A stretch of 44,304 nucleotides of DNA from Macrostomum lignano (taxonomy: Eukaryota), in contig NIVC01004492.1 in the NCBI GenBank assembly GCA_002269645.1, positions 1 to 44,304 on the forward strand. The letters run 5' to 3'. Positions 1 to 44,304 of this stretch are shown here, one piece after another (positions within the stretch are counted from its first letter, which is position 1; each line of letters opens with the position of its first letter). A program made the translations under genes and the position numbers. The notes under the pieces were generated by a model, which was not told where the DNA came from, ran no database searches, and saw nothing but the letters and a program-made list of their open reading frames with translations.

Positions 1-3000
1 CAGCCCCTACAATCTCATAGTGAGACACAACAGCCCCTACAATCTCATAGTGAGACACACAACCCTACAATCTCATAGTGAGACACACGAGCCCCTACAA
101 TCTCATAGTGAGACACAGCCCCTACAATCTCATAGTGAGACACACAGCCCCTATTATCTCATGGAGACACACGCCCCTACAATTCTCATAATGAGACACA
201 AGGCCCTACAATCTCATAGTGAGACACACAGCCCCTACAATCTCATAGTGAGACACACAGCCTCTACAATCTCATAGTGAGACACAGCCCCTACAATTCT
301 CATAATGAGACACAAGGCCCTACAATCTCATAGTGAGACACACAGCCCCTACAATCTCATAGTGAGACAACAGCCCCTACAATCTCATAGTGAGACACAC
401 AGCCCTACAATCTCATAGTGAGACACACAGCCCCTACAATCTCATAGTGAGACACAGCCCCTACAATCTCATAGTGAGACACACACAGCCCCTACAATCT
501 CATAGTGAGACACCAGCCCCTACAATCTAAGTGAGACACCCCCTACAATCTCATAGTGAGACACACAGCCCCTACAATCTCATAGTGAGACACACAGCCC
601 CTACAATCTCATAGTGAGACACACAGCCCCTACAATCTCATAGTGAGACACACAGCCCCTACAATCTCATAGTGAGACACACAGCCCCTACAATCTCATA
701 TTGAGACACACAGCCCCTACAATCTCATAGTGAGACACACAGCCCCTACAATCTCATAGTGAGACACAAGCCCCTACAATCTCATAGTGAGACACACAGC
801 CCCTATTATCTCATGGTGAGACACAGCCCCTACAATTCTCATAGTGAGACACACACAGCCCCTACAATCTCATAGTGAGACACACAGCCCTACAATCTCA
901 TAGTGAGACACAGCCCCTACAATCTCATAGTGAGACACAGCCCTACAATCTCATAGTGAGACACACAGCCCTACAATCTCATAGTGAGACACACAGCCCC
1001 TACAATCTCATAGTGAGACACAAGCCCCTACAATCTCATAGTGAGACACACAGCCCCTATTATCTCATAGTGAGACACAGCCCCTACAATCTCATAGTGA
1101 GACACAGCCCCTACAATCTCATAGTGAGACACACAGCCCCTACAATCTCATAGTGAGACACACAGCCCCTACAATCTCATAGTGAGACACAGCCCCTACA
1201 ATCTCATAGTGAGACACACAGCCCCTACAATCTCATAGTGAGACACACAGCCCTCAATTCTCATAGTGAGACACAAGCCCCTACAATCTCATAGTGAGAC
1301 ACAGCCCCTACAAATCTCATAGTGAGACACACAGCCCCTACATCTCATAGTGAGACACGGCCCCTACAATCTCATAGTGAGACACAGCCCCTACAATCTC
1401 ATAGTGAGACACACAGCCCCTATTATCTCATGTGAGACACAGCCCCTACAATTCATAGTGAGACACACAGCCCCTACAATCTCATAGTGAGACACACAGC
1501 CCCTACAATCTCATAGTGAGACACACAGCCCTACAATCTCATAGTGAGACACACAGCCCCTACAATCTCATAGTGAGACACACAGCCCTACAATCTCATA
1601 GTGAGACACACAGCCCCTACAATCTCATAGTGAGACACAAGCCCCTACAATCTCATAGTGAGACACACAGCCCCTATTATCTCATAGTGAGACACAGCCC
1701 CTACAATTCTCATAGTGAGACACAGCCCCTACAATCTCATAGTGAGACACACGCCCCCTACAATTCATAGTGAGACACACAGCCCCTACAATCTCATAGT
1801 GAGACACAGCCCCTACAATCTCATAGTGAGACACACAGCCCCTACAATCTCATAGTGAGACACACAGCCCCTACAATCTCATAGTGAGACACACAGCCCC
1901 TACAATCTCATAGTGAGACACAGCCCCTACAATCTCATAGTGAGACACACAGCCCCTACAATCTCATGAGACACAGCCCTACAATCTCATAATGAGACAC
2001 AAGCCCCAATCTCATAGTGAGACACACAGCCCCTACAATCTCATAGTGAGACACACAGCCCTACAATCTCATAGTGAGACACACAGCCCCTACAATCTCA
2101 TAGTGAGACACACAGCCCTACAATCTCATAGTGAGACACACAGCCCCTACAATCTCATAGTGAGACACACAGCCCTACAATCTCATAGTGAGACACACAG
2201 CCCCTATTATCTCATGTGAGACACAGCCCCTACAATTCTCATAGTGAGACACACAGCCCCTACAATCTCATAGTGAGACACACAGCCCCTACAATTCCCA
2301 TAGTGAGACACACAGCCCCTACAATCTCATAGTGAGACACACACCCCCTACAATCTCATAGTGAGACACACAACCCCTACAATTCTCATAGTGAGACACG
2401 AAGCCCCTACAATCTCATAGTGAGACACGCCCCTACAATCTCATAGTGAGACACACAGCCCCTATTATCTCATGGCTAGACACGGCCCCTACAATTCTCA
2501 TAATGAGACACAAGGCCTACAATCTCATAGTGAGACACACAGCCCCTATTATCTCATGGCTAGACACGGCCCCTACAATTCTCATAATGAGACACAAGGC
2601 CCTACAATCTCATAGTGAGACACACAGCCCCTACAATCTCATAGTGAGACAACAGCCCCTACAATCTCATAGTGAGACACACAGCCTCTACAATTCTCAT
2701 AGTGAGACACACAGCCCCTACAATCTCATAGTGAGACACAGCCCCTACAATCTCATAGTGAGACACGCAGCCCCTATTATCTCATGGTGAGACACAGCCC
2801 TACAATCTCATAGTGAGACAACAGCCCCTACAATCTCATATGAGACACACAGCCTCTACAATTCTCATAGTGAGACACACAGCCCCTACAATCTCATAGT
2901 GAGACACAGCCCCTACAATCTCATAGTGAGACACGCAGCCCTATTATCTCATGGTGAGACACAGCCCTACAATTCTCATAGTGAGACACACAGCCCCTAC

Positions 3001-3125
3001 AAACTCATAGTGAGACACACAGCCCCTTAATTCTCATAGTGAGACACACAGCCCTTACAATCTCATAGTGAGACACACAGCCCCTTACAATTCTCATAGT
3101 GAGACACACAGCCCTTACAATTCTC
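1..3125. repeat. Minisatellite array, ~29-bp unit CACACAGCCCCTACAATCTCATAGTGAGA (27-31 bp variants), about 100 copies, truncated by the window edge
   Basis: Directly visible tandem repeat; period 29 at 542/571; length variation arises in the CA run and the C run. Confidence 0.97.
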
Positions 3126-3634
3126 AACAGCAGAAGCCTCCATAATTCATTGACTCGCAAGTCAGACATTATGGAACAATCATTCAGTCGGAGCTTTCGC
3201 TCTGACACAAATATTGTCCGCAAAAATTATGGCGGCGGAATGAATACCCATGGAAAATTTGCATACCCCATTACTTGCAGCGGCTTGCACTGGGGTCCGG
3301 AGTTGGAGAAGGGGGGGGGGGGTTGACGGACCCCATAGCCTCACTTATCCCTGATATCGAGGGGTTCTGATACTGCAGCTGATCATTATTCCACTGGGCC
3401 AGCGGCTGCCACTAGGATTATTGTAGGCTGGGAGAAAGTCCCAACTATACCGGCCTACTCACCCCCAGGGGAGGTTTTTTGAGTCCAAGTACTCCCTGCT
3501 TGGGATGCGACAGTCTGCAATGAATTGGCTGCAGCGATCGTGGCAGCAATTTTGCGGCACACTCAAGTCTGCCGCCTCTTGCTTTCCTGTGGGAAACCCC
3601 TGTGGAGTCTGGGGACTGTGGTGTCTTAGCTGTC

Positions 3635-7607: not shown

Positions 7608-8857
7608 CTCCATATTGTCCACTGATAGACATTGTCCACTGATATCCTAAAGACACTGTCTACTGATATACTTAAGACATTCTCTACTGATATCCTATAG
7701 ACATTGTCCACTGATATCCTATAGACATTGTCCACTGATATCCTATAGACATTGTCCACAGATATCCCATAGACATTGTCCACTGACATCCTATAGACAT
7801 TGTCCACTGATATCCTATAGACATTGTCCACTGCTATCCCATAGACATTGTTCACTGATATCCTAAAGACATTGTCTACTGATATCCCCTAGACATTGTC
7901 CACTGATATACTAAAGACATTGTCTACTGATATCCTATAGATATTGTCCACTGATATCCTATAGACATTGTCCACTGACATCCTATAGACATTGTCCACT
8001 GCTATCCCATAGACATTGTTCACTGATATCCTATAGACATTGTCCACTGCTATCCCATAGACATTGTTCACTGATATCCTAAAGACATTGTCTACTGATA
8101 TCCCATAGACATTGTCCACTGATATCCTATAGACATTGTGCACTGATATCCCATAGACATTGTCCACTGATATACTAAAGACATTGTCTACTGATATCCT
8201 ATAGATATTGTCCACTGATATCCTATAGACATTGTTTCCACTGATATCCTATAGACATTGTTTTCACTGATATCCTATAGACATTGTTTCCACTGATATC
8301 CCCTAGACATTGTCCACTGATATACTAAAGACATTGTCCACTGATGTCCTATAGACATTGTTTACTGCTATCCCATAGACATTGTCCACTGACATCCTAT
8401 AGACATTGGCCACTGATATCCTATAGACATTGTCCACTGATATCCTATAGACATTGTCCACTGATATCCCATAGACATTGTCCACTGATATACTAAAGAC
8501 ATTGTCCACTGCTATCCCATAGACATTGTCCACTGACATCCTATAGACATTGTCCACTGCTATCCCATAGACATTGTCCACTGACATCCTATAGACATTG
8601 GTCACTGATATCCTATAGACATTGTCCACTGACATCCTATAGACATTGGTCACTGATATCCTATAGACATTGTCCACTGACATCCTATAGACATTGTCTA
8701 CTGATATCCTATCGATATTGGCCACTGATATCACATAGACATTGTCCACTGATGGCCAAGATATCCCATGGACATTGTCCACTGATATCACATAGAAATT
8801 GGCCACTGATACCCTATAGACATTGTCCACTGAAATCCTATCGATATTGTCCACTGA
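7608..8857. repeat. 24-bp minisatellite CTGATATCCTATAGACATTGTCCA, about 50 copies
   Basis: Visible tandem array; 8-aa period ISVDNVYR in the antisense ORFs. Confidence 0.96.
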
Positions 8858-9516: not shown

Positions 9517-10515
<999 letters not shown>

Positions 10516-11968
10516 GCAAACAGAAGCTAGAATAGCTTTGCCACGGTCACCCATCACAGCCCAAAACCGCCACGCAAGGTCTGGGAGACGCATCTGTGGC
10601 AATGGTCAGATGGGGCAGCAGACGAAGAGACAGAGCAGAGGGTCTTGAAACAGTCGACTCGTTCGCCTCTGTTCTTCTCTCCCCCCAGACCCGTCGAGTT
10701 TCGTTTGCAATAATCAGCCCCGGAGACTCGGCTACCTCACGCGATAAGCCGCGGGTCCTAATCTGCAATATTCCCCGTGCCATTTCTGTCCCATCCCTTC
10801 CTGCCCGCCCAGCTACTCGGCCCTGACTTGGCCGCATCTTTTCTCGGAGTCTGTGTGTTTTTTGCGCGTCCCCCCTCCTTGCTTCCCCCCTCTGTCATCC
10901 TCGAGCTCATATCCCGAGAGTTGAAGACTGAAAACTCGGCTGAGTAGCGTCTCATCGTGATTCACCAAATAAGAGGGGAAAGGGTTTTGGGCAAACACAG
11001 GAAATGTCTACCTTGTGAGTTTGTATGCTGAAGAGCAGTCTTAAGTAGCTAGACAGACTCTAATGCAGAAAAAAATATGGCTAGTGATTAATTAGGTTGG
11101 AAAAAGAATGTCGTGATTGCTCTGTTCTGTAAAAGACTTCTGATTGATTCTCAGTGGCATGTCATGCTGACATTAGCCTATAAAGCGAGCCCGTTCTAGT
11201 TCATCTGAAACGAAAGACATTGATATACCTTCCGGGATCAGATCCACGCGGGTAAAGTGCAGAGAGTCTCTCCCTAGCTGAGTCGGTTACAGATTAGGAC
11301 GATATAGAATGCAGAAAACATGACCGTTGGAAAGAAGAGATTCAGGTAGAGGCAGAGAGAGAGACGGGATGCCCGACAATTGTGGCTCGATCCCCTCCCA
11401 GACTGACGGGTCTCGGAACCTGGGGGCCGTCTTACTCGTGCATGTCAAGCAAATTAATTAAGGATTAACGGGATAAGCCTTTCTCTTCCTTTCTTCTCAT
11501 TATTTCACTATGGGAGGGCCGGGCCCACAGAAGATGCGCTGGCTCAAGTCTGGTCTGCCGGTCTGTCCCGGGATTTGCGGCTGCCATCGAGCGCACGCAT
11601 CCACTAGTTTTACGACGCAACTGGGAACTCGAATGTATCGCGAAGAAGATTTTCTGTCTCGACTCGAATGAATTGGAATTGGAAAAAACAGCAAAATTTC
11701 CCCCTGCTCAGGCAAGTTTCAGTCAGTCTTAGTTAGGAACTCCTTGAGCTAAAGTGCAATTTTTCCTGGTTTGAAGACTCCCATGTGTTCTGTTTCTGTC
11801 CCTTAGCTTTCCACTTCACTCTTTCCGTTGAGTTATGGCTCTAGGGGTTATGGATATTTTAGCTTCAAAGGCTTGCCTCCTTATTTTACAAAGGCACAGC
11901 AGCCGCAACAAAGGACTTGCGGTCTCGACTCCTCAATTCATTACCTTTCTCTAGCTCGATTTCCCTAA

Positions 11969-13122
11969 CTCGACTACATCATGGAGATCTGGAACAGGAA
12001 CCTAGCTTGACTACATCATGGAGATCTGGAATCAGAACCTAGCTTGACTAGATCATGGAGATCTGGAACAAGAAACTAGCTTGACTAGACCATGGAGATC
12101 TGGAATCAGAACCTAGCTTGACTAGATCATGGAGATCTGGAATCAGAACCTAGCTTGACTACATCATGGAGATCTGGAACAGGAACCTGGCTCGACTAGA
12201 TCATGGAGATCTGGAACAAGAACCTAGCTCGACTACATCATGGAGATCTGGAACAAGAACCTGGCTCGACTACATCATGGAGATCTGGAACAAGAACCTG
12301 GCTCGACTACATCATGGAGATCTGGAACAAGAACCTGGCTCGACTACATCATGGAGATCTTTAATCAGAACCTGGCTCGACTATATCATGGAGATCTGGA
12401 ACAAGAACCTAGCTTGACTAGATCATGGAGATCTGGAACAAGAACCTAGCTTGACTAGATCATGGAGATCTAGAACCAGAACCTGGCTCGACTAGATCAT
12501 GGAGATCTGGAACAAGAACCTGGCTCGACTACATCATGGAGATCTGGAACAAGAACCTGGCTCGACTACATCATGGAGATCTGGAACAAGAACCTAGCTC
12601 GACTACATCATGGAGATCTAGAACCAGAACCTGGCTCGACTATATCATGGAGATCTGGAACAAGAACCTAGCTTGACTAGATCATGGAGATCTGGAACAA
12701 GAACCAAGCTCGACTACATCATGGAGATCTGGAATCAGAACCTGGCTCGACTACATCATGGAGATCTGGAACAAGAACCTGGCTCGAATACATCATGGAG
12801 ATCTGGAATCAGAACCTGGCTCGACTACATCATGGAGATCTGGAACCAGAACCTAGCTTGACTAGATCATTGAGATCTGGAACAAGAACCTAGCTTGACT
12901 AGATCATGGAGATCTAGAACCAGAACCTGGCTCGACTAGATCATGGAGATCTGGAACAAGAACCTAGCTTGACTAGATCATGGAGATTTGGAACAAGAAC
13001 CTAGCTTGACTAGATCATGGAGATCTGGAATCAGAACCTGGATCGACTACATCACGGAGATATAGAACCAGAACCTGGCTCGACAAGATCATGGAGATCT
13101 GCATGGAACCAGAACCTGGCTA
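11969..13122. repeat. 37-bp minisatellite CTCGACTACATCATGGAGATCTGGAACAAGAACCTGG, about 31 copies
   Basis: Visible tandem array; the 37-aa cycle in the ORF track equals 3 units; AGATCT occurs in nearly every unit. Confidence 0.96.
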
Positions 13123-15885: not shown

Positions 15886-16640
15886 TCTCTCGATTATTCA
15901 GATTTTTCTGTTTGAATCTCCCTCTGTTTTCGCGCTTTGTAAACTGCTTTCAGGGTTTCAATTTTTTGCCACTGATTCTGTTATGATCTTTGTGTATTCC
16001 TTTTTTAGCTATTTCTTCAGTTCTGAAGCATTAAATTTATACATCCTCCATTTGAAATTTATGCGATTCCTTTACCTCTTCAGCCCCAAGCACACATGAC
16101 TGACACCTTAGGTATTTAACGAACGTACTAGTGACATTCACATTATTACGAGTATTAGGGACTATCGTTGGTCGACTGCGGGCTCGATGAAGCCGGAACC
16201 CCGTGTGTGTGTGGTGGGTGTCCGCCCTTAAAAAGAGAGCGAGAAAGAGAGAGAGACAAACATAAGGCCGTCGCCATCTTTTTAGCCACCTGAATCGCTC
16301 GCTATACTGTACAGTAGCTTCTAGCTGCTGGGATGACTCTCTGATATCATAGGCGGGGCGCCAGTGTGATTGACAGGTGCTCTTCCTCTCTCCTTTTCCC
16401 TGCACCTGGCGTGGCTTAACGGGGCAGCTTTGGTGCTGACTAAATAAGAACAGCTCGATAAGAGCGCGGTATACATGCGATATGAGCGATTGATATAGAG
16501 GTGAAATCAACAGATGGTCAGGTGTGTGTGTATATTTGTACGATAACTACGTGGGTGGCTGCATTATCTTGCTAGGGTGCAAAGAAAGTCTGTTGATCTG
16601 ATGCGCTTTACAAATGCAAAAAACTTGGGTCCTATTGTAA

Positions 16641-16950
16641 GGCATCGCTACCTCCAGGGAATGCAAATTCTGCCGCTTCGGTGTTGAGAATGCGGAGCAC
16701 TTCATCGATGTCTCTACTCAGGACCTAATTTACTCAGGACAGGCTCACCCAGTTGGGGGGAAACTTGGACCCTTCAGACATTTTCAGGCCCGAGAATCTC
16801 TGCCAGCTCGTCCGCTCCCTCTCTGGAGGAGGACCGCGTTGCGGACGCCGGCACCACCGGATCTCCCTACGCGACATCAGCTGCCCGCGGTCGCTAGGGC
16901 TCGCTGTATCCCGATGCCGGAACCCCCTGCAGCCGAGTCCGGTAAGTAAA
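16641..16950 (+). mobile_element. Decayed 3' end of an RNase H-type non-LTR retrotransposon
   Basis: Translates as GIATSRECKFCRFGVENAEHFI, then after a frameshift RLTQLGGNLDPSDIFRPENLCQLVRSLSG. This parallels [15 protein letters not shown]...[29 protein letters not shown] of the element at 21-22 kb. It ends in GTAAGTAA, a TAAG-tail remnant. Confidence 0.6.
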
Positions 16951-17089
16951 TCACAAAGTTCTGTTAGAATCTAGTTTAGATATAAAACCGCCACAAGATA
17001 CGCTGTAGGAAGTCTCAGAATGAGAACAGCGTCACAGGGCTTGGGCGCGAACGTAGACTTTGCCAGACCTTGATGGGTAAGGCCACGTC

Positions 17090-18490
17090 CACAGAAATTA
17101 CACAGAATGCTCAGTCAGCGTTTTTTTGAGAATAGAACTGAGTATAAATAGATGCGCGCTCATACTACTTTGTCGATGAAGAGGAATGAGTAGCCATAGG
17201 TTTGTCTATGGCCAAAACCTCGGGGTTTCCGCGAGCGCCTATGAGGCGAAGGCTTAGTATGTTGCGAGAGTCTAAAGTTACCCATCTAGATAATACAAAA
17301 TCTGTGCTTTGGACTGCGTGGTTTTGAGTATTAAGAGAGGAAGAAGAATTTTTGCTAAGCAAAATGCAGAGAAGCTACGGCTGCCCAAACTACGCTTTTG
17401 AATGTCCACCTGGAACACGATCCACAGGTTTCCATCAGACCGTGATCGGTGAGTTGCAGATTGCGAAATGACCAACTTCGTCATTCTCTCTGTAGAAGCC
17501 TTCGTACCTTTCGTACCTTTATCTACATTTAGCAACTGCGACTGATATAATTAAAACTACAGGTGTGAAGATTGGGCTCGACGGATATTCCGAGCTGACC
17601 TTATAGGCAGAATTGTTCGAGCACAAATGGGCGAATGCTGTTGTATGCAGTCAGCACTTTGAGGACCACATGTACGAGGCTCACAGTCGACTTGCTTGGA
17701 ATTCCATTCCTACGCTAAAGCTCTACAAGCAAGCCGTAACAAAGCAAATACATCGGCCGCCTCCAAAGCAGAGAACTGATTCTCCAGCATCTCTGCATCA
17801 AACTCGCGTAAGTGGTAAAGTACAAAACGAAAACGATGTTTCTGGTTTTGCCGAGACTGCAAGTGAGCGGGATGATTAGCCAAAGGGAAGGAAACCCGTC
17901 CCAAGAGCAACTTTGGTTCGCCTGCTAAAAGAAAACCGGAATAATGGATAAATAATCAGCGGTCCCAGTGCGTGATAACGATTGTCTGGCGAGCGCCGGT
18001 AGGCGCGAGCCATAGACAAATCGTTGTCACGTGCTGCGACCGCTGATTCTTTGCATTGTTTTTCTGTTTGACGATCCTACAGACAATGCATTGTTTGTAG
18101 TAGTGGATTGTTCTGCATTAAAAATGTGAATAATGATCGTCAAATTGCTAAACAATGAATAATTCTTGTATTGCATTGCCTACATTGTTCTTATGACGGA
18201 CTTTATCAAAGTATGTTTTCCTTTTATGAGCATGTATACTTGCATCATTTGAATAAAAACGTACATTTAAACCATTTAAAACAGTATGATACATAAAAAG
18301 ATATGATACCTTGAGTTAGTGCCTTTTGTACTGCAAAATCGACAATCGCATAGCAGTTTTAACGCAAGTCACAGCTATAGTCTATGGCTACTCATTCCTC
18401 TTCATCGACAAAGTAGTGTGAGCGCGCATCTATTTCTACTCAGTTTTATTCTAAAAAAACGCTGACTGAGCATTCTGTATAAGTTCTGTG
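17090..18490 (+). mobile_element. Non-autonomous TIR DNA transposon (1401 bp), P-superfamily-like, carrying a THAP domain
   Basis: Left TIR 17090-17199 and right TIR 18382-18490 are reverse complements (5 substitutions and 1 indel in ~110 bp). Termini are CACAG...CTGTG. An 8-bp direct repeat GCCACGTC lies at 17082-17089 and 18491-18498. There is an internal THAP coding remnant and no catalytic transposase domain was found. Confidence 0.88.
17364..17879 (+). pseudogene. THAP zinc-finger domain, split by a 114-nt intron (17449-17562), with at least two apparent frameshifts
   Basis: Motifs in order: SYGCPN; IHRFPSDRD-R (donor CG|GTGAGT at 17449; acceptor TACAG|G at 17562); CEDWARRIFRADL; VVCSQHFEDHMY; LAWNSIPTL. 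These match the THAP hallmarks GCxN, FP, W..i.R, CSxHF and vPTl. A further donor CGC|GTAAGT lies at 17808. Confidence 0.75.
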
Positions 18491-19470
18491 GCCACGTCAG
18501 CAGCAGGATGAAGTGACCTGCCGGCTGGAGTCCCCGCCGGCGCAACAGGTCGCTTGGACGGGACAGGGCGCGATGACGACAGAGGGTCGCGTCGTCGACA
18601 TTAATATTCGGTTTTATACTAGATTCTTCTGAAATTAATTTTAACTGTGAATCTGCTTCGCTGGGAAAAGCACTAATAGTTAGATTAGAAAGTAGTAAAA
18701 AGCTCACATATGTGGTCATTAGGATTAATTGGTTGACTTTTTCGACTCATCACTAGGACATACCAGTACGTCTCTCGGAGAACACTACAAGCAGCACATC
18801 TATGCATAGTGAAGGTTATCGAGGTATTCATCAAGCGACTTTTTATACATAACCAGTAGGCCTACAAGATCAAAGCCTCCACTTCATCATATGTGTGCTA
18901 CCATGCCACTACTGCCTCTACACAACGCAATTTCTTCCCTTTGATGGAGTCGACAGTCTCGACAGTCTCACAGGAAGTGTAGAAGCTCAACAGATAGGGG
19001 CCTGAGCTGTGCAGCTCTGATTACAGGCTTTGATGAGACCAAGCAGACAGGTCCAAAAAATACTAATTCAACGGAGTCAGGATTGAATCATGAGCTTGGC
19101 CAAAGGTTTGATACAAGAGTCTTGTTAGTGCTTACCGAAAAGATGAAAGAAAAGTGTCTGTGGGTGATAAGCAATACTGTGCTATAAATTTAAAACTTTA
19201 TTCCCGCTGTAGCCTAAGATAGAGCGCCAAATTCTGACTATCTCCACTTCTGGACATCTGAATTCCGTGTTAAGCAAGTGTGCGTTTCCTTCAAGGTGCA
19301 GTCGCAAGTTTGTTGAGGAAAAATTTTGAAAACTATCTCATACTGCACAGCGCTGATTCGGATTTTGTCATAGACAAATTCGGCAGAAATTTTAGCAGAA
19401 CAGGCCCATGTTCATGAACTGATGGTGTGTCAGTGTTGCTGGCCATCCGGCCGCCGGAAGTTACCATGCT

Positions 19471-19737
19471 AGGTTGGATATGAGATATGAGTCGGATTCA
19501 CGACTGAAAGGTCGGAGGTTCGATTCTCGACCCACTCGGAACAATTTGTGTCCTTGAGCAAGACACTTAACTCTGCATTGCTTCAGTTCACCCAGCTGTA
19601 AAATGGGTGGGTGCCAGCATTAGCTGGGGTAATTGAGGGTGTGTGTGGCGACCCCCCAGTCATTGGACTGAACAGCCGTACGCAGCCTTCAGATGCGCCG
19701 CGCGATAGCGGGTGTAATCAATTATTATTATTAATTA
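19471..19737 (+). mobile_element. tRNA-derived SINE with CORE (MIR-like) central domain and (ATT)n tail
   Basis: B-box GGTTCGATTC at 19517-19526. The segment 19548-19607, GTGTCCTTGAGCAAGACACTTAACTCTGCATTGCTTCAGTTCACCCAGCTGTAAAATGGG, resembles the MIR core as remembered (GTGACCTTGGGCAAGTTACTTAACC...CAGTTTCCTCATCTGTAAAATGGG). ATT repeats occur at 19721-19735. Confidence 0.75.
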
Positions 19738-20397
19738 TAGCTAAAACCTGTTCATAAGTTTATTGTCGACGACCACAAAGACAACACCGCTAAAGGGCAA
19801 ACAACACCTAAAACTTTCTAGAGTAAAAGGTTTCAAGCATTACAGGGGTTGGTACTTAACAAGCAAAATTAGTGCTTTCGCAGCAACATAGGTGCACTTA
19901 AGACGTATAGGTACTGTTGCTAGGAATACGGTCTTCCAAAAGCGTCAATCATGACGTGTTAAACAAGGGTGGAATTCCTGACAGGACTCTGCAGGCCTTG
20001 GTGGCGTCAAGGCCACAGATAATTGCTCTGCAACCGTAAGCCATCGGATAGGGGAAGCGGGAATGGGCATTTTCCTCTTTTTTCAGGATCGAATTTCTCT
20101 CCCCGTCCAGCCCATGCAGATCGCCTCTGTCGTTTTTGTTTCTTTTGTTTATCCTTTTTCTGCTCCCGCCTGTGCTGAGGACCTACCACAAACAGGATTG
20201 CGCTGAAGATTGCAGCCTCAAAGGGAGGAGTTGCCTTTGGCTAGAACAACTATTATGATTTATTCTGTTTGATAAAATCATTTTAGAGTCCCGATAAAGG
20301 CCAAAACAAACTGTAAGTACAGACCTTAAAGATTTCTCGTTTGAATTGCGCAAAATCAATCAAGCTATTTGTTTGTGTATGCATATTTGACTGTCTT

Positions 20398-20597
20398 AAT
20401 CGGAATCTCCCTTCTAAAGATGAGCACTGAGTTGTGGATTGAGAATCGGAATCTCCCTTCTAAAGATGAGCACTGAGTTGTGGATTGAGAATCGGAATCT
20501 CCCTTCTAAAGATGAGCACTGAGTTGTGGATTGAGAATTGGAATCTCCCTTCTAAAGATGAGCACTGAGTTTTGGATTGAGAATCGGAATCTCCCTT
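20398..20597 (+). repeat. 46-bp tandem repeat CGGAATCTCCCTTCTAAAGATGAGCACTGAGTTGTGGATTGAGAAT, about 4.3 copies
   Basis: Units start at 20401, 20447, 20493, 20539 and 20585. Confidence 0.96.
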
Positions 20598-21077: not shown

Positions 21078-22237
21078 CGCATATGGACTTTGTCCGCCGC
21101 GACCTTAACAACATCCACATGGACCTGGGCAATGTGGATAGTCGACCTCCCGCCCTCAACATCAGGAGGGGCTTCAAGACCGCCATCCCTGGCCGAGACA
21201 ACATTCCGCTGGATGTCGGTGTGAACCGGCGCAGCCAGGGCATTCACTGCTTCACCGACGGCTCGCTGTTCAACGGCCGCGCTGGAGCGGGTATTGCCAT
21301 TTTCCACGAGGGTAAGATGCTTCTCCAGGAAAGTCTGCACCTCGGTGAGAACACCTCAGTTTTCCAAGCTGAAATTTGCGCCATTGAGCAGTGTGCCCAG
21401 CAACTGTTTCAGGCGAACATTAATAATTTTGACATTAATTTCTACACTGATAGCCAAGCTGCTATTAAGGCCTTAACCACTGAGAATATCTCCGCTGCTA
21501 CAGTATCTCAATGCCACCGCAGTGTGCAATCTCTCTCAGTCCTTAACAGGATTAGAATTATCTGGACACCTGGTCACAGCAACATCCTGGGCAACGAGCT
21601 CGCGGACTCTCTCGCCAAGGAGGGCAGCAACCCAGACGGCAACCACCGTCTGATGAGGCTACCCACCCCCAGGTCGCAAGTCACCCGCCATATCAACAGG
21701 TGGCTCCATCAGCAGCACCAGCTCCACTGGAACAGCTGCACCGAGTACAGGCAGAGCCGCTCTGCCATGCCTAACCTGAACAGGAAAGTCTCTGATTATC
21801 TGATTTCGCTTAACAGAACCGACCTCAGGGAGATGTGCATGGTCCTAACCGGCCACGGATTCTTCCAGAGACATATATCGTTGCAAACCGGTTGCCCTCC
21901 CACCTGTCCCTTCTGTGGCATAGGAGAGGAGACCGCGGAGCATCACGTCACCTTCTGCCCTTACTTCAACAAGGCGCGGCACAAATACCTCGGCCACCCC
22001 CAGCGGATGGACGAGCTGACCACCGCGGACAATATCCGAGACCTCCGCGCCTTCGTCCGGGACTCCGGCCGGATGAGGGTCGCCGATGCCTCCACTGCGG
22101 ACCTGCCGACTACTGGCGGGGACTGGGCGCACCCCCAAGGCTAATCCTTGTGCTCTTTTACCTTGGGGTTGCGATAGGGGCCTCGCGGCCTATTCGCGGC
22201 GCCTGCGCCCCCCGTCAGTAGTAAGTAAGTAAGTAAG
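21078..22237 (+). mobile_element. 5'-truncated non-LTR retrotransposon (I/Loa-group-like) with (TAAG)n tail and 14-bp TSD
   Basis: Direct repeat TAGCGTCCGATTCC at 21064-21077 and 22238-22251; (GTAA)n tail at 22220-22237; contains the RNase H and zinc-knuckle ORF. Confidence 0.9.
21083..22144 (+). CDS. C-terminal part of LINE ORF2: RNase H domain plus CCHC zinc knuckle (RT domain lost by 5' truncation)
   Basis: [26 protein letters not shown] and [19 protein letters not shown] give the D-E-D-D RNase H core. Downstream are LTGHG and [18 protein letters not shown]. The ORF is open for 353 codons. Confidence 0.88.
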
Positions 22238-22689: not shown

Positions 22690-23550
22690 TTCTCAATCCA
22701 CAACTCAGTGCTCATCTTTAGAAGGGAGGTTCCAATTCTCAATCCACAACTCAGTGCTCATCTTTAGAAGGGAGATTCCAATTCTCAATCCACAACTCAG
22801 TGCTCATCTTTAGAAGGGAGATTCCAATTCTCAATCCACAACTCAATGCTCATCTTTAGAAGGGAGATTCCAATTCTCAATCCACAACTCAATGCTCATC
22901 TTTAGAAGGGAGATTCCAATTCTCAATCCATAACTCAGTGCTCATCTTTAGAAGGGAGATTCCAATTCTCAATCCACAACTCAATGCTCATCTTTAGAAG
23001 GGAGATTCCAATTCTCAATCCATAACTCAGTGCTCATCTTTAGAAGGGAGATTCCAATTCTCAATCCACAACTCAATGCTCATCTTTAGAAGGGAGATTC
23101 CGATTCTCAATCCACAACTCAGTGCTCATCTTTAGAAGGGAGATTCCAATTCTCAATCCACAACTCAATGCTCATCTTTAGAAGGGAGATTCCAATTCTC
23201 AATCCAAAACTCAATGCTCATCTTTAGAAGGGAGATTCCAATTCTCAATCCACAACTCAATGCTCATCTTTAGAAGGGAGATTCCGATTCTCAATCCATA
23301 ACTCAGTGCTCATCTTTAGAAGGGAGATTCCAATTCTCAATCCATAACTCAGTGCTCATCTTTAGAAGGGAGATTCCAATTCTCAATCCATAACTCAGTG
23401 CTCATCTTTAGAAGGGAGATTCCAATTCTCAATCCATAACTCAGTGCTCATCTTTAGAAGGGAGATTCCAATTCTCAATCCACAACTCAGTGCTCATCTT
23501 TAGAAGGGAGATTCCAATTCTCAATCCAGAACTCATTGCTCATCTTCAGA
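22690..23550 (-). repeat. Same 46-bp repeat as 20398-20597, in inverted orientation, about 18-19 copies
   Basis: The unit TCTCAATCCACAACTCAGTGCTCATCTTTAGAAGGGAGATTCCAAT is the reverse complement of the left array unit. Confidence 0.96.
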
Positions 23551-25014: not shown

Positions 25015-28000
25015 CTGATGTGCAATTTTTACGACAAACTTAATAAATCTTAAATAAATTTTAGGTTCACTTCGACCTCAAACAATACACTTTCAGGGAA
25101 GTTTAAGTAAAATGGACCCAAAGGACAGGATGTCACAGGGACTTGAGGACAGGATGTCAAAGGGACTTGAGGACAGGATGTCAAAGGGACATGAGGACAG
25201 GATGCCAAAGGGACATGAGGACAGGATGTCAAAGGGACTTGAGGACAGGATGTCAAAGGGACATGAGGACAGGATGTCAAAGGGACTTGATGACAGGATG
25301 TCAAAGGGACTTGAGGACAGGATGTCAAAGGGACTTGAGGACAGGATGTCAAAGGGACTTGAGGACAGGATGTCAAAGGGACTTGATGACAGGATGTCAA
25401 AGGGACTTGATGACAGGATGTCAAAGGGACATGAGGACAGGATGTCAAAGGGACTTGAGGACAGGATGTCAAAGGGACATGAGGACAGGATGTCAAAGGG
25501 ACTTGAGGACAGGATGTCAAAGAGACTTGAGGACAGGATGTCAAAGGGACTTGAGGACAGGATGTCAAAGGGACATGAGGACAGGATGTCAAAGGGACTT
25601 GAGGACAGGATGTCAAAGGGACTTGAGGACAGGATGTCAAAGGGACATGAGGACAGGATGTCAAAGGGACTTGAGGACAGGATGTCAAAGGGACTTGATG
25701 ACAGGATGTCAAAGGGACTTGATGACAGGATATCAAAGGGACTCGATGACAGGATGTCAAAGGGTCTTGATGACAGGATGTCAAAGGGACTTGATGACAG
25801 GATGTCAAAGGGACATGAGGACAGATGTCAAAGGGACTTGATGACAGGATGTCAAAGGGACTTGATGACAGGATGTCAAAGGGACTTGAGGACAGGATGT
25901 CAAAGGGACTTGAGGACAGGATGTCAAAGGGACTTGAGGACAGGATGTCAAAGGGACTTGATGACAGGATGTCAAAGGGACTTGAGGACAGGATGTCAAA
26001 GGGACTTGATGACAGGATGTCAAAGGGACTTGATGACAGGATGTCAAAGGGACATGAGGACAGGATGTCAAAGGGACTTGAGGACAGGATGTCAAAGGGA
26101 CTTGAGGACAGGATGTCAAAGGGACATGAGGACAGGATGTCAAAGGGACATTAGGACAGGATGTCAAAGGGACTTGAGGACAGGATGTCAAAGGGACTTG
26201 AGGACAGGATGTCAAAGGGACATGAGGACAGGATGTCAAAGGGACTTGAGGACAGGATGTCAAAGGGACTTGAGGACAGGATGTCAAAGGGACTTGATGA
26301 CAGGATATCAAAGGGACTTGATGACAGGATGTCAAAGGGTCTTGATGACAGGATGTCAAAGGGACTTGATGACAGGATGTCAAAGGGACATGAGGACAGA
26401 TGTCAAAGGGACTTGATGACAGGATGTCAAAGGGACTTGATGACAGGATGTTAAAGGGACTTGAGGACAGGATGTCAAAGGGACATGAGGACAGGATGTC
26501 AAAGGGACATGATGACAGGATGTCAAAGGGACTTGAGGACAGGATGTCAAAGGGCAAGTGCGAAATAATGGCTTTTAAAAAGTTTCAAGAAAAAGCCATT
26601 AGAACACCTGTTACCCCAATCCGCAAGATTACCTGCAGTCGTGAGTAATGGTAGTCTCCGAAGTCATCTCGCAGTCCTCGGACGGTGTGCCAGCCTCATC
26701 GCCCGATTCAAACTTGACGCCGCTGAAGTCTTCAATAGCGGAGTCGCCATCCGCGTCAACTTTATGATCCGCAGCGGCCTCGTCGTCAAGGGCTTCGAGA
26801 AGGGTCTTCTGCTCGGATTCGAGCTCCGAAAGACGAGCCTGGGGAGGGGCGGATTAAGCTGTAGAGATTTTGATATGCTGCATTAGACAGATTTGATTGT
26901 CGCTAAACACACTCCGAGTTTAACGAGTCAAGCAGATAAACACACTCCAAGTTAAATGCGGAAAGCCGATAAACACACTCTGAGTTTAATGAGTCGAGCA
27001 GATAAACACACTCCGAGTTTAACGACAGAGGCCGATAAACACACTCCAAATTTGATGCGCAAATCCGATAAACACACTCCGAGTTTAATGAGTCAGGCCG
27101 ATAAACACACTCATAGTTTAATGAGTCAGGCCGATAAACACACTCAGAGTTTAATGAGTCAGGCCGATAAACACACTCCGAGTTTAACGAGCCACGCCGA
27201 AAAACACACCCAGAGTTCAATGACTCAGGTCGATAAACACACTACAACAGACTGCCTACTGAACAGTAACAAGATATGAATGTAGGAATCTAATCTCTCA
27301 AAGTAAGAGATATTCAAAGTGAGAGCACTCAAGTTATTACGAGTTCAGTTACCTGAAGCGCATTAGCTTCATCAGCGGATCGCCTGTTAGCCAACTGAAG
27401 CTCCCGAATGCAGCCCAGCACTCGAGTCAGCAGTTTCGCTTCTGACCGATCAGCTGCGCCGCCGCCGCCGCCGATGCCGCACAGCTCACGCAGCTGGTCG
27501 AGTCTCTGACGAATTTTTTCAACGCGCTTCTTCTCAGCCTTTTTATGCGGCTCTCGCTGGTGACGCGGCAGCCGCGACGGCGTTGAGGGCGGCGTCGCTG
27601 GCTCGTCTTTCAGGTGGACGCCGACGCCGACAGCGGCGGACAGGCCAACAACGTCGGGATTGTCGGCGACGGAAACGGCTGCCGCAGCGCCTGAGGCAGC
27701 GCCGCCAACGGAGAAGCCGGCAGCTGACGAGCTGGACGATGTTGCACCGCCACTGCCGCCGCTGTGATGATGATGATGCTGCTGCTGCTGCTGCCATCGC
27801 GGCGAATCCGACGTGTCCGAAGGCGACGAGACGCCGTCGCCGAAGCCACCGCCGCTGGAACTGCCAACCCGCCTCAGGCGACGATTGAGTGTGTCGAACA
27901 ACTCCTGTCGGGACAGACTGTTCACGTCAGCGTAGCGCCGCCTGCGCTCGTCAGGATCGATCGGAACGGCGGCGGCGGCTGTGGCGTCGGCGCGCACGGC

Positions 28001-28470
28001 GGCGGCGGAGGAGGCGCCATAGACAGTCGGGCGGGCTGTCCATTCCGCGGGTGCGCCGGAGTGCTGAAGCCGCTCAGTAGCGAAGGAGTTGAGGCTACGG
28101 ATGGCACCGAGCTGGAGAAGTTTGAGTAGCTTGAGCAGCTGGAGTGACTGCGGTACTGTTGGAAGGCCGAGTTGCTGGTGTTAGATGTCAGTGAAGGCTC
28201 CTGCGGTTGCGGCATGGTGAGCTGTTGCCACAGTATGCTAGCGGAAGTAGCAGTGCCATTGCTGTCATTGGCTACAGAAGTGGGGAATTGGAACAAATCA
28301 TAAGACGGCTCAATGTCTTCAAGCGCGGTGCTCTGGTGCTGCTGCAAATGACCAGCGCCAGATGCTGCATCCATCATTGGCTCATCCTGATGCTGCTGCA
28401 CATTGCCAGCGTCTGAGGATATTAGATCAAGCAGAAAGGACATGCTGTCCTCTCCATTGCCAGTGTCCAT
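24633..28470 (-). CDS. bHLH-leucine zipper transcription factor, Mlx/Mondo (Max network)-like; 3 coding exons (28470-27353, 26838-26633, 25014-24633), one apparent frameshift in exon 1
   Basis: Basic-helix1 REPHKKAEKKRVEKIRQRLDQLRELC; helix2 SEAKLLTRVLGCIRELQ; a zipper joined across the intron (ADEANALQ|ARLSELESEQKTLL). Splice phases 0 and 2 are consistent. The last exon LFHRLIGGLLVDSFRRAV...FQRWLSTLTASRLRRDL resembles the Mlx/Mondo C-terminal DCD pattern as remembered. Confidence 0.75.
25110..26555. repeat. 24-bp minisatellite GGGACTTGAGGACAGGATGTCAAA, about 60 copies, filling intron 2 of the bHLH gene
   Basis: Visible tandem array; 8-aa period MSKGLEDR. Confidence 0.97.
26633..26838 (-). 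CDS. bHLH-LZ gene exon 2 (zipper plus acidic linker)
   Basis: Acceptor CCTCCCCAG|GCT and donor CAG|GTAATC; open frame ARLSELESEQKTLLEALDDE...THDC. Confidence 0.8.
26903..27245. repeat. 33-bp tandem repeat GATAAACACACTCCGAGTTTAATGAGTCAGGCC, about 10 copies, in intron 1 of the bHLH gene
   Basis: Visible; 11-aa period ADKHTPSLMSQ. Confidence 0.92.
27353..28470 (-). CDS. bHLH-LZ gene exon 1 (acidic/S/P-rich N-terminus plus bHLH)
   Basis: ORF 27922-28470 overlaps ORF 27329-27997 in another frame. Donor CAG|GTAACT at 27352. The start codon is uncertain. Confidence 0.7.

Positions 28471-33027: not shown

Positions 33028-44304
<11,277 letters not shown>

What the first reader, a model, noticed from the sequence alone, without database searches (positions are those of the whole stretch)
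17082..18498. Complete P-like TIR element retaining only an intron-split THAP DNA-binding domain (KP-repressor-like architecture)
Seen: ~110-bp TIRs about 95% identical, CACAG termini, a perfect 8-bp TSD (GCCACGTC), a THAP domain interrupted by a phase-2 GT-AG intron, a second donor at 17808 with no matching downstream exon, and no catalytic domain. The motif GCCATAG/CTATGGC occurs four times (17193, 17206, 18009, 18382), and TTTGTCTATGGC at 17201 is mirrored at 18009-18020. Established: THAP plus 7-8-bp TSD plus CANRG termini fits the P superfamily; in Drosophila, internally deleted KP elements encode THAP-containing repressors. Inference: this is a deletion derivative of a possibly undescribed P/Galileo-like family that could encode a THAP-only regulator, and the repeated heptamer could be its binding site. 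A THAP-bearing hAT element is the main alternative. Two frameshifts and the unrecovered first Cys mean it may simply be dead, or be affected by assembly indels.
Basis: partly seen in the sequence, partly recalled or inferred. Interest (0 to 1): 0.75.

Follow-up and report, generated by a model that had tools for sequence, protein, structure and literature searches.

The report
Dead P-type transposon in a flatworm
This is a 1.4-kb internally deleted, decayed copy of a P-element-type cut-and-paste transposon in the flatworm Macrostomum lignano; it is a real mobile-element insertion of a known kind and cannot make a working protein.

Summary
The sequence features are real. The element spans 17090-18490, with 110/109-nt inverted ends that are 94.5% identical, CACAG...CTGTG tips and a perfect GCCACGTC duplication. 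A THAP reading frame is split by a GT-AG intron at 17449-17562. The host is Macrostomum lignano.

The P-versus-hAT question is settled for P. Related elements share the same ~30-nt tip and a subterminal block. They encode THAP, a coiled coil, the P-transposase HTH, the TNP-like RNase H domain and a GTP-binding insertion domain. One relative matches the Drosophila P transposase structure 6P5A.

Three complete insertions have 8-bp duplications; 9 bp is not excluded. The THAP intron sits at the same phase-2 position in four loci.

- GTAAGT at 17808 is coding, not a splice donor.
- The frame stays colinear with a relative's transposase up to about 17945, which is the deletion breakpoint. A 103-nt palindrome follows.
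- This copy has five lesions: no first zinc Cys, two frameshifts, a 7-residue deletion and a TAG stop. A KP-like repressor from this copy is therefore not supported.

GCCATAG extends to a 9-mer, GCCATAGAC, that is conserved near the ends of related families. This is a new member of a known kind, of modest interest.

The parts
17082..17089 (.). Left target-site duplication GCCACGTC
   Evidence: Identical to 18491-18498. The preceding G at 17081 makes 9 bp possible.
17090..17199 (+). Left terminal inverted repeat, 110 nt, tip CACAG
   Evidence: 94.5% identical to the right arm. The first ~30 nt are conserved in the L001, L002, L004 and L005 ends.
17165..17193 (+). Conserved subterminal block CTACT..TG..(G/A)TGAAG...AGTAG within the left TIR; candidate transposase-binding region
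   Evidence: CTACT, TGAA and AG.AG columns are invariant across 7 ends from 5 loci.
17193..17212 (.). Small palindrome GCCATAG-GTTTGT-CTATGGC at the inner edge of the left TIR
17364..17448 (+). THAP exon 1 (decayed): first zinc Cys absent, -1 frameshift at 17421-17422
   Evidence: Alignment to L002, P0001, P0055 and P0057: QCAAYGC versus QRS-YGC.
17449..17562 (+). Phase-2 GT-AG intron, 114 nt, inside the THAP domain
   Evidence: Same position and phase in L002 (649-720), L004 (1694-1764) and the L001 acceptor. Five relatives' gene models lose homology exactly here.
17563..17945 (+). Exon 2 remnant: THAP C-terminal half, linker and first residues of the coiled coil. Carries a +1 frameshift at ~17612-17615, a 7-residue in-frame deletion and a TAG stop at 17877-17879.
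   Evidence: tblastn colinearity with the L002 transposase, residues 12-168, E = 5e-22; with P0056, residues 34-146, E = 1e-15.
17950..18052 (.). 103-nt imperfect palindrome at the deletion breakpoint, with GCCATAGAC near its centre
   Evidence: Self-complementary at 77%. The DNA hairpin folds at -41.6 kcal/mol, z = -8.7.
18053..18381 (+). AT-rich non-coding 3' region (32% GC), AATAAA at 18252
   Evidence: No Pfam or tblastn match.
18382..18490 (-). Right terminal inverted repeat, 109 nt, tip CTGTG. Conserved block at 18388-18416, GCCATAGAC at 18380-18388(-).
18491..18498 (.). Right target-site duplication GCCACGTC

Best explanation
A non-autonomous, internally deleted and mutationally dead copy of a P-superfamily (P element / THAP9-type) cut-and-paste DNA transposon in the Macrostomum lignano genome.

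Inferred history: a full-length ancestor encoded a transposase with a THAP domain, a coiled coil, an HTH and an RNase H domain carrying a GTP-binding insertion. Everything from the start of the coiled coil to the 3' untranslated region was lost. The likely cause is interrupted gap repair after excision, as happens for Drosophila P deletion derivatives. A 103-nt palindrome sits at the junction.

The copy inserted by staggered target cleavage, giving an 8-bp (possibly 9-bp) duplication. It then accumulated about 5% divergence between its TIRs and five disabling lesions in the THAP frame.

With both ends intact, it could at most be moved in trans by a related transposase. That enzyme would bind the conserved subterminal sequences and cut at the CACAG tips. 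The copy cannot make a DNA-binding protein.

Shown: the anatomy, the superfamily assignment, the conserved intron and the lesions. Inferred: the deletion mechanism, mobilisation in trans and the identity of the binding sites.
For: Host: the LINE ORF at 21083-22144 is 96-99% identical to many M. lignano proteins.

Element anatomy. THAP: Pfam E = 1.3e-10. The nearest proteins are M. lignano THAP proteins.

P0056 / L002: it carries the same THAP clade, the P-specific PF21787 domain at E = 1.6e-20, and matches the Drosophila P transposase 6P5A at E = 5e-6. Its contig starts with CACAGAATATACAACAGAATGG.

Relatives with the same tip:
- L004 has the P HTH (PF12017, E = 1.5e-4, 22.5 bits, just under the 23-bit cutoff) and PF21787.
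- L005 has PF21787 and the GTP-binding insertion domain PF21788 at E = 2e-19.

End alignment: 7 ends from 5 loci share the ~30-nt tip and a subterminal block.

Duplications in three independent complete insertions: GCCACGTC (window), GTTGCAAG (L001) and GTCTTTGC (nested in L002).

Intron: same position and phase in the window, L002, L004 and L001.

Colinearity and lesions: colinear to residue ~167, with the listed lesions. L001 is a second deletion derivative with different breakpoints.

Literature: the P element has 8-bp TSDs, and relatives have 7-9 bp (PMC3698922). The GTP-binding insertion is unique to P transposase (PMC8230255).
Against: - No full-length autonomous partner of this exact family was found. 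Every relative recovered is partial or itself defective, and they are only 32-64% identical in protein.
- The assignment therefore rests on shared termini plus THAP homology, not on a cognate transposase.
- The genome could not be searched, so copy number, the family consensus and activity are unknown.
- The frameshifts might be assembly errors.
- An 8-bp versus 9-bp TSD is unresolved.
- The origin of the palindrome is not established. Its similarity to the left subterminal region is not significant.
Confidence: 0.88

Rival explanations
1. A KP-like repressor element. The deletion derivative is kept because it expresses a THAP-only protein that binds the family's ends and damps transposition.
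For: The architecture resembles KP: the N-terminal DNA-binding part is retained and the catalytic part deleted. M. lignano has several short THAP-only gene models of the same clade with intact C2CH residues, such as P0001 (144 aa) and P0055 (141 aa). The TAG at 17877 would give a product of similar size.
Against: This copy lacks the first zinc ligand and has two frameshifts and a 7-residue deletion within THAP. The coiled coil that KP uses for dimerisation is cut after about 8 residues. No expression data are available. Only the indels could be assembly artefacts.
Confidence: 0.04
2. A THAP-bearing hAT element.
For: hAT elements also make 8-bp target-site duplications.
Against: Relatives with the same termini carry P-specific domains and no hAT or BED domain. 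The tip CACAG does not fit the hAT YARNG pattern, which is recalled from memory. A 25-nt remnant in L002 keeps 12-13 nt of each tip between duplicated targets. That is the footprint type expected from P-type staggered cleavage (PMC10983969), not from hAT hairpin excision.
Confidence: 0.02
3. An amplified MITE-like family that still moves. The coding remnant is irrelevant and the element is an active non-autonomous parasite of a living P-like transposase.
For: Both ends and the conserved subterminal blocks are intact. The TSD is perfect. A footprint-like remnant in a relative suggests that excision happens in this lineage.
Against: The TIR arms differ by about 5% and the frame is heavily decayed, so this insertion is not recent. 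There is only one copy in 44 kb. No intact transposase was found.
Confidence: 0.12

Closest known systems
Drosophila melanogaster P element and its internal-deletion derivatives (KP and others)
   Same: N-terminal THAP followed by a coiled coil. Relatives carry the RNase H core with a GTP-binding insertion. TSD of 8 bp, with TIRs plus conserved subterminal sequences. Deletion derivatives keep both ends and the 5' coding part. A relative shows a footprint-like remnant that retains at most 17 nt of each tip.
   Different: TIRs are 110 nt against 31 nt. The tip is CACAG against CATGA. An intron lies inside the THAP domain at a position conserved in this lineage. Protein similarity to DmTNP is low (E = 5e-6 for a relative). 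This copy's frame is dead, and its coiled coil is truncated, unlike KP.
THAP9 / Pdre-type P-like elements of vertebrates and other metazoans
   Same: Same superfamily domain set: THAP, TNP-like RNase H N-terminal domain and insertion domain.
   Different: Those are mostly domesticated or fish elements. This is a flatworm lineage with its own termini. I found no paper describing it.
Galileo / 1360 (P superfamily, Drosophila)
   Same: THAP-bearing P-superfamily elements with TIRs longer than those of P and several THAP sites in the ends (PMC3688188).
   Different: Galileo TIRs reach hundreds of nt to over 1 kb. Their TSDs are 7 bp and the transposase gene has no intron (PMC3698922). Here the TIR is 110 nt, the TSD is 8-9 bp and the gene has an intron.
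BuT5 and its divergent P element (Drosophila repleta group)
   Same: A non-autonomous partner about 1 kb long that shares only its ends with a P-like master. TSD of 8 or 9 bp (PMC3698922).
   Different: BuT5 has no coding remnant and 3-bp TIRs. This element keeps a recognisable THAP frame and long TIRs.

Membership tests
P superfamily of DNA transposons | N-terminal THAP (C2CH) DNA-binding domain | tested here: met
   Pfam THAP at 42.3 bits, E = 1.3e-10, on the spliced and frame-corrected translation. Homology is clear, but the first Cys is missing in this copy.
P superfamily of DNA transposons | RNase H-like catalytic core with a GTP-binding insertion domain | tested here: inconclusive
   Absent from this copy because it is deleted. 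Present in relatives that share the terminal sequence: PF21787 in P0056, P0154 and P0155, PF21788 in P0155, and a PDB 6P5A match. No cognate full-length copy of this exact family was found.
P superfamily of DNA transposons | Target-site duplication of 7-9 bp (8 bp for P) | tested here: met
   GCCACGTC here, GTTGCAAG in L001 and GTCTTTGC in L002. A 9-bp reading is possible because a G precedes each left copy.
P superfamily of DNA transposons | TIRs with a CANRG tip (Repbase convention, recalled from memory) | tested here: met
   CACAG at both ends here, and in L001, L002, L004 and L005.
P superfamily of DNA transposons | Staggered 17-nt cleavage within the TIR and GTP dependence | not testable with these tools
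   Only an indirect hint exists: a 25-nt remnant (12 + 1 + 12 nt of the tips) between duplicated 8-bp targets at L002 378-418. The 17-nt stagger is cited from PMC10983969.
hAT superfamily | hAT-type transposase (BED finger, hAT C-terminal dimerisation domain) | tested here: not met
   There is no such domain in this copy or in any relative sharing its ends. P-specific domains are found instead.
hAT superfamily | 8-bp TSD and a YARNG tip | tested here: not met
   The TSD length fits, but the tip CACAG has C at the third position. The tip rule is recalled from memory.
KP-type repressor derivative | Open frame encoding an intact THAP plus a dimerising leucine zipper | tested here: not met
   Missing Cys1, -1 and +1 frameshifts, a 7-residue deletion and a TAG at 17877. 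The coiled coil is cut at about residue 167 of the L002 protein.
KP-type repressor derivative | Represses transposition of the parent family | not testable with these tools
   This needs expression and transposition assays.
Galileo / Foldback-like | Very long TIRs (hundreds of nt to over 1 kb) and a 7-bp TSD | tested here: not met
   The TIR is 110 nt and the TSD is 8 or 9 bp.

The most novel reading that the evidence does not exclude
Macrostomum lignano hosts a still-active, undescribed P-superfamily lineage. It is marked by the CACAGAATATAC..CAGAATG tips and an ancient intron inside THAP. Its recurrent THAP-only derivatives, meaning intact gene models such as P0001 and P0055 rather than this dead copy, would act as KP-like repressors. 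That would be an independent re-invention of P-element self-regulation in a flatworm, and a possible endogenous source or hazard for transgenesis in this model.
Probability: 0.1. Interest if true: 0.55.

Novelty: new member of a known kind. Interest (0 to 1): 0.3.

Why it matters
P-like transposons are known from protists to vertebrates, so finding one in a flatworm is no surprise.

The useful yield is descriptive:
- It gives defined ends, a TSD length, a conserved THAP intron and candidate binding motifs for a P-like lineage in M. lignano. This is a regeneration and transgenesis model with a very repeat-rich genome.
- Proper annotation of such elements avoids mistaking their THAP fragments for host transcription-factor genes. 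Several UniProt 'THAP-type domain-containing proteins' of this species appear to be such fragments.
- If an intact partner exists, the lineage could matter for transgene stability or as a tool.

Tried and rejected
- Look-ups of the genomic loci of P0001 and P0002 found nothing on record.
- The scan of bacterial and archaeal genome contigs with a transposase alignment found no relative.
- The metagenome scan gave two distant P-like loci, L006 and L007, without the conserved tips. They were not informative.
- An empty-site test through a paralogous locus failed because the neighbouring ORF is not on record.
- Rfam and tRNA scans of 16000-20400 and of the whole window were negative.
- I considered that the breakpoint palindrome copies the left subterminal region. 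The local alignment is not significant: 4/300 and 28/300 shuffles reach the observed scores.
- I considered that the element is nested in another TIR element, based on a 13-nt inverted match at 16966/18615. This was rejected as a short chance-level match with no BLAST support.
- No other copy of the element, and no transposase remnant, lies elsewhere in the window.

Full report
**Observation**

The region holds a textbook TIR insertion.
- The arms 17090-17199 and 18382-18490 align over 110 columns with 5 mismatches and one gap. Self-BLAST gives 94.5% identity, E = 8e-44.
- The 31-nt tip occurs nowhere else in the 44-kb window.
- The tips are CACAG/CTGTG, flanked by a perfect GCCACGTC repeat at 17082-17089 and 18491-18498.
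- The base 5' of the left repeat is also G, so a 9-bp duplication cannot be excluded. The same ambiguity recurs in the related insertions described below.

**Host**

A LINE RNase H ORF at 21083-22144 is 96-99% identical to many Macrostomum lignano proteins. The window is therefore flatworm DNA. It is extremely rich in minisatellites.

**Coding remnant**

- After splicing out 17449-17562 and bridging two frameshifts, the translation matches Pfam THAP at 42.3 bits, E = 1.3e-10.
- A word-indexed search found two M. lignano THAP proteins at 60-64% identity.
- An exhaustive phmmer search with one of them found a small clade. Most members are M. lignano gene models.
- One member, P0056 (363 aa), comes from a 1788-bp Logan contig, L002. 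It joins this THAP clade to the P-specific TNP-like RNase H N-terminal domain, PF21787, at E = 1.6e-20.
- P0056 also matches the Drosophila P transposase structure 6P5A, at E = 5e-6.

**Linking the relatives to this element**

- L002 starts with CACAGAATATACAACAGAATGG.
- Two further relatives start with almost the same 30 nt. L004 is a JGI metagenome contig. L005 is a contig binned in a 'Kangiellaceae' MAG.
- L004 and L005 carry PF21787. L004 also matches the P HTH model PF12017 at 22.5 bits, just under its 23-bit cutoff. L005 carries the GTP-binding insertion domain PF21788, E = 2e-19.
- The GTP-binding insertion is described as unique to P transposase (PMC8230255).
- An M. lignano genomic locus, L001, holds a 1020-bp element at 9761-10780. 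It has the same tips, the 8-bp duplication GTTGCAAG, and a frame retaining THAP exon 2 plus the coiled coil. L003 is a duplicated copy of this same insertion.
- An alignment of 7 ends from 5 loci shows two conserved parts. One is the ~30-nt tip. The other is a subterminal block, CTACT..TG..GTGAAG...AGTAG, 75-105 nt from the end.
- Together with the 8-bp TSD, this places the element in the P superfamily (P = 8 bp; relatives 7-9 bp, PMC3698922). It rejects hAT: no hAT or BED domain appears anywhere.

**Intron**

- The phase-2 GT-AG intron at 17449-17562 lies between ...R and CEDW.
- L002 has a 72-nt intron at the same codon position. Removing it gives an uninterrupted 385-residue frame, whereas retaining it gives an immediate stop.
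- L004 has a 71-nt intron at that position.
- L001 keeps the acceptor at that position.
- Five relatives' gene models lose THAP homology exactly at that boundary.
- The intron is therefore real and old in this lineage.

- The GTAAGT at 17808 is not a donor. It lies in codons RVSGKVQ, which align with RVEKVQ of the L002 protein.
- Colinearity continues through GRKPVPRATLVRLLKENRNN, matching GRKPTPPVAMIRKLKAEQREN, to residue ~167 at window ~17945.
- So the element keeps THAP, the linker and the first residues of the coiled coil. Everything downstream is deleted.
- A 103-nt imperfect palindrome at 17950-18052 sits at the breakpoint, with a hairpin z-score of -8.7.
- After it come 329 nt of AT-rich non-coding DNA with an AATAAA.
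- Nothing in the rest of the element or the window matches a transposase.

**Integrity**

Relative to the clade, the copy has five lesions:
1. It lacks the first zinc-binding Cys (QCAAYGC has become QRS-YGC).
2. It has a -1 frameshift at 17421-17422.
3. It has a +1 frameshift at ~17612-17615.
4. It has a 7-residue in-frame deletion after HMY.
5. It has a TAG stop at 17877-17879.

Assembly indels could explain at most the two frameshifts. With about 5% divergence between the arms, this is an old, dead copy. A KP-like repressor encoded by this copy is therefore not supported. The genome does contain short, apparently intact THAP-only gene models of the same clade, such as P0001 and P0055. The general idea thus stays open for the lineage.

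**Motifs**

- The heptamer count in the window, 6 against 4.45 expected, is not remarkable by itself.
- The 9-mer GCCATAGAC occurs 5 times against 0.31 expected, 3 of them in the element.
- It also occurs facing inward near the left ends of L001, L002 and L005. A one-mismatch version lies near the right end of L001.
- That conservation, in otherwise unalignable sequence, fits a protein-binding site.
- The CTACT..GTGAAG..AGTAG block is conserved in all 7 ends and is at least as good a candidate.
- In P and Galileo, THAP sites are likewise subterminal (PMC3688188). Which motif the THAP domain binds is untested.

**Mechanism**

- Shown: the anatomy, the superfamily, the intron and the decay.
- Inferred: a full-length P-like ancestor lost its interior by incomplete gap repair. 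The derivative was inserted by a related transposase with an 8-bp (or 9-bp) staggered target cut. It has since decayed. It could now at most be mobilised in trans.
- L001 is a second derivative with different breakpoints, so such deletions recur in this lineage.
- L002 378-418 reads GTCTTTGC-CACAGAATATAC-A-GTATATTCTGTG-GTCTTTGC.
- This remnant looks like a P-type excision footprint, because P transposase cuts 17 nt inside the ends (PMC10983969). It could also be an extreme mini-derivative.

**Novelty**

I found no paper describing P-like elements in Macrostomum. Repbase and Dfam could not be consulted. P-like elements are widespread, so this is a new member of a known kind, with modest interest.

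**Limits**

The M. lignano genome, reads and transcriptomes could not be searched. Copy number, the cognate autonomous partner, activity and empty sites remain unknown.

Noticed in passing
L002 378-418: A 25-nt perfect palindrome made of 12 + 1 + 12 nt of the element tips (CACAGAATATAC A GTATATTCTGTG). It is flanked by a duplicated GTCTTTGC and lies inside the 5' region of a related P-like element. It looks like a P-type excision footprint or an extreme mini-derivative.
   Followed up: partly
L005 (GCA_036350755.1, JAZBNS010000480.1), whole contig; nt 1-88: A eukaryotic P-like transposon contig is binned in a 'Kangiellaceae bacterium' MAG, which is probably contamination. Its first 88 nt are tandem ATTCTGTAAA(C/T)GC units that resemble the inverted element tip.
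   Followed up: no
window 17081; L001 9752; L002 377; L004 1392: The base just 5' of the left target duplication is G in four of five related ends. It equals the terminal G of the right end, so the TSD could be 9 bp, or the target has a G preference.
   Followed up: partly
window 20398-20597 and 22690-23550: Two arrays of the same 46-bp unit, in inverted orientation, flank the 2.1-kb segment holding the LINE RNase H ORF at 21083-22144.
   Followed up: no
window 27329-28470 (-): Two overlapping ORFs lie in different frames. The downstream one carries an HLH domain (Pfam E = 1e-4). This is either a frameshifted bHLH gene or an assembly indel, which bears on how far the frameshifts in the element can be trusted.
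   Followed up: partly
window 28016-28024, 36061-36076, 19360-19378: Further GCCATAGAC-type sites lie outside the element. 36061 reads GTCTATGGCAAAACC, like 17204-17219, and 19360 reads GGATTTTGTCATAGACAAA. No P-like tips are nearby. They may be remnants of related elements or chance matches.
   Followed up: partly
window 19440-19700: A stretch with a tRNA-like B box (GGTTCGATTC) followed by GTCCTTGAGCAAGACACTTAAC. It resembles a tRNA-derived SINE core (from memory). ARAGORN finds no tRNA.
   Followed up: no
window 1-3126, 7625-8753, 9517-10515, 11964-13101, 25122-26554, 36895-37709: Very dense minisatellite and microsatellite content: a 29-bp unit x110, two 24-bp arrays, (GACA)n x250, a 37-bp unit x31 and (TTAG)n x203.
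   Followed up: no
UniProt M. lignano entries P0001, P0002, P0055, P0057, P0060, P0061; NCBI PAA65982.1 / PAA78298.1: Several annotated 'THAP-type domain-containing' or hypothetical proteins of M. lignano appear to be fragments of P-like transposons. L001 shows one inside a TIR- and TSD-bounded element. They are probably not host genes.
   Followed up: partly
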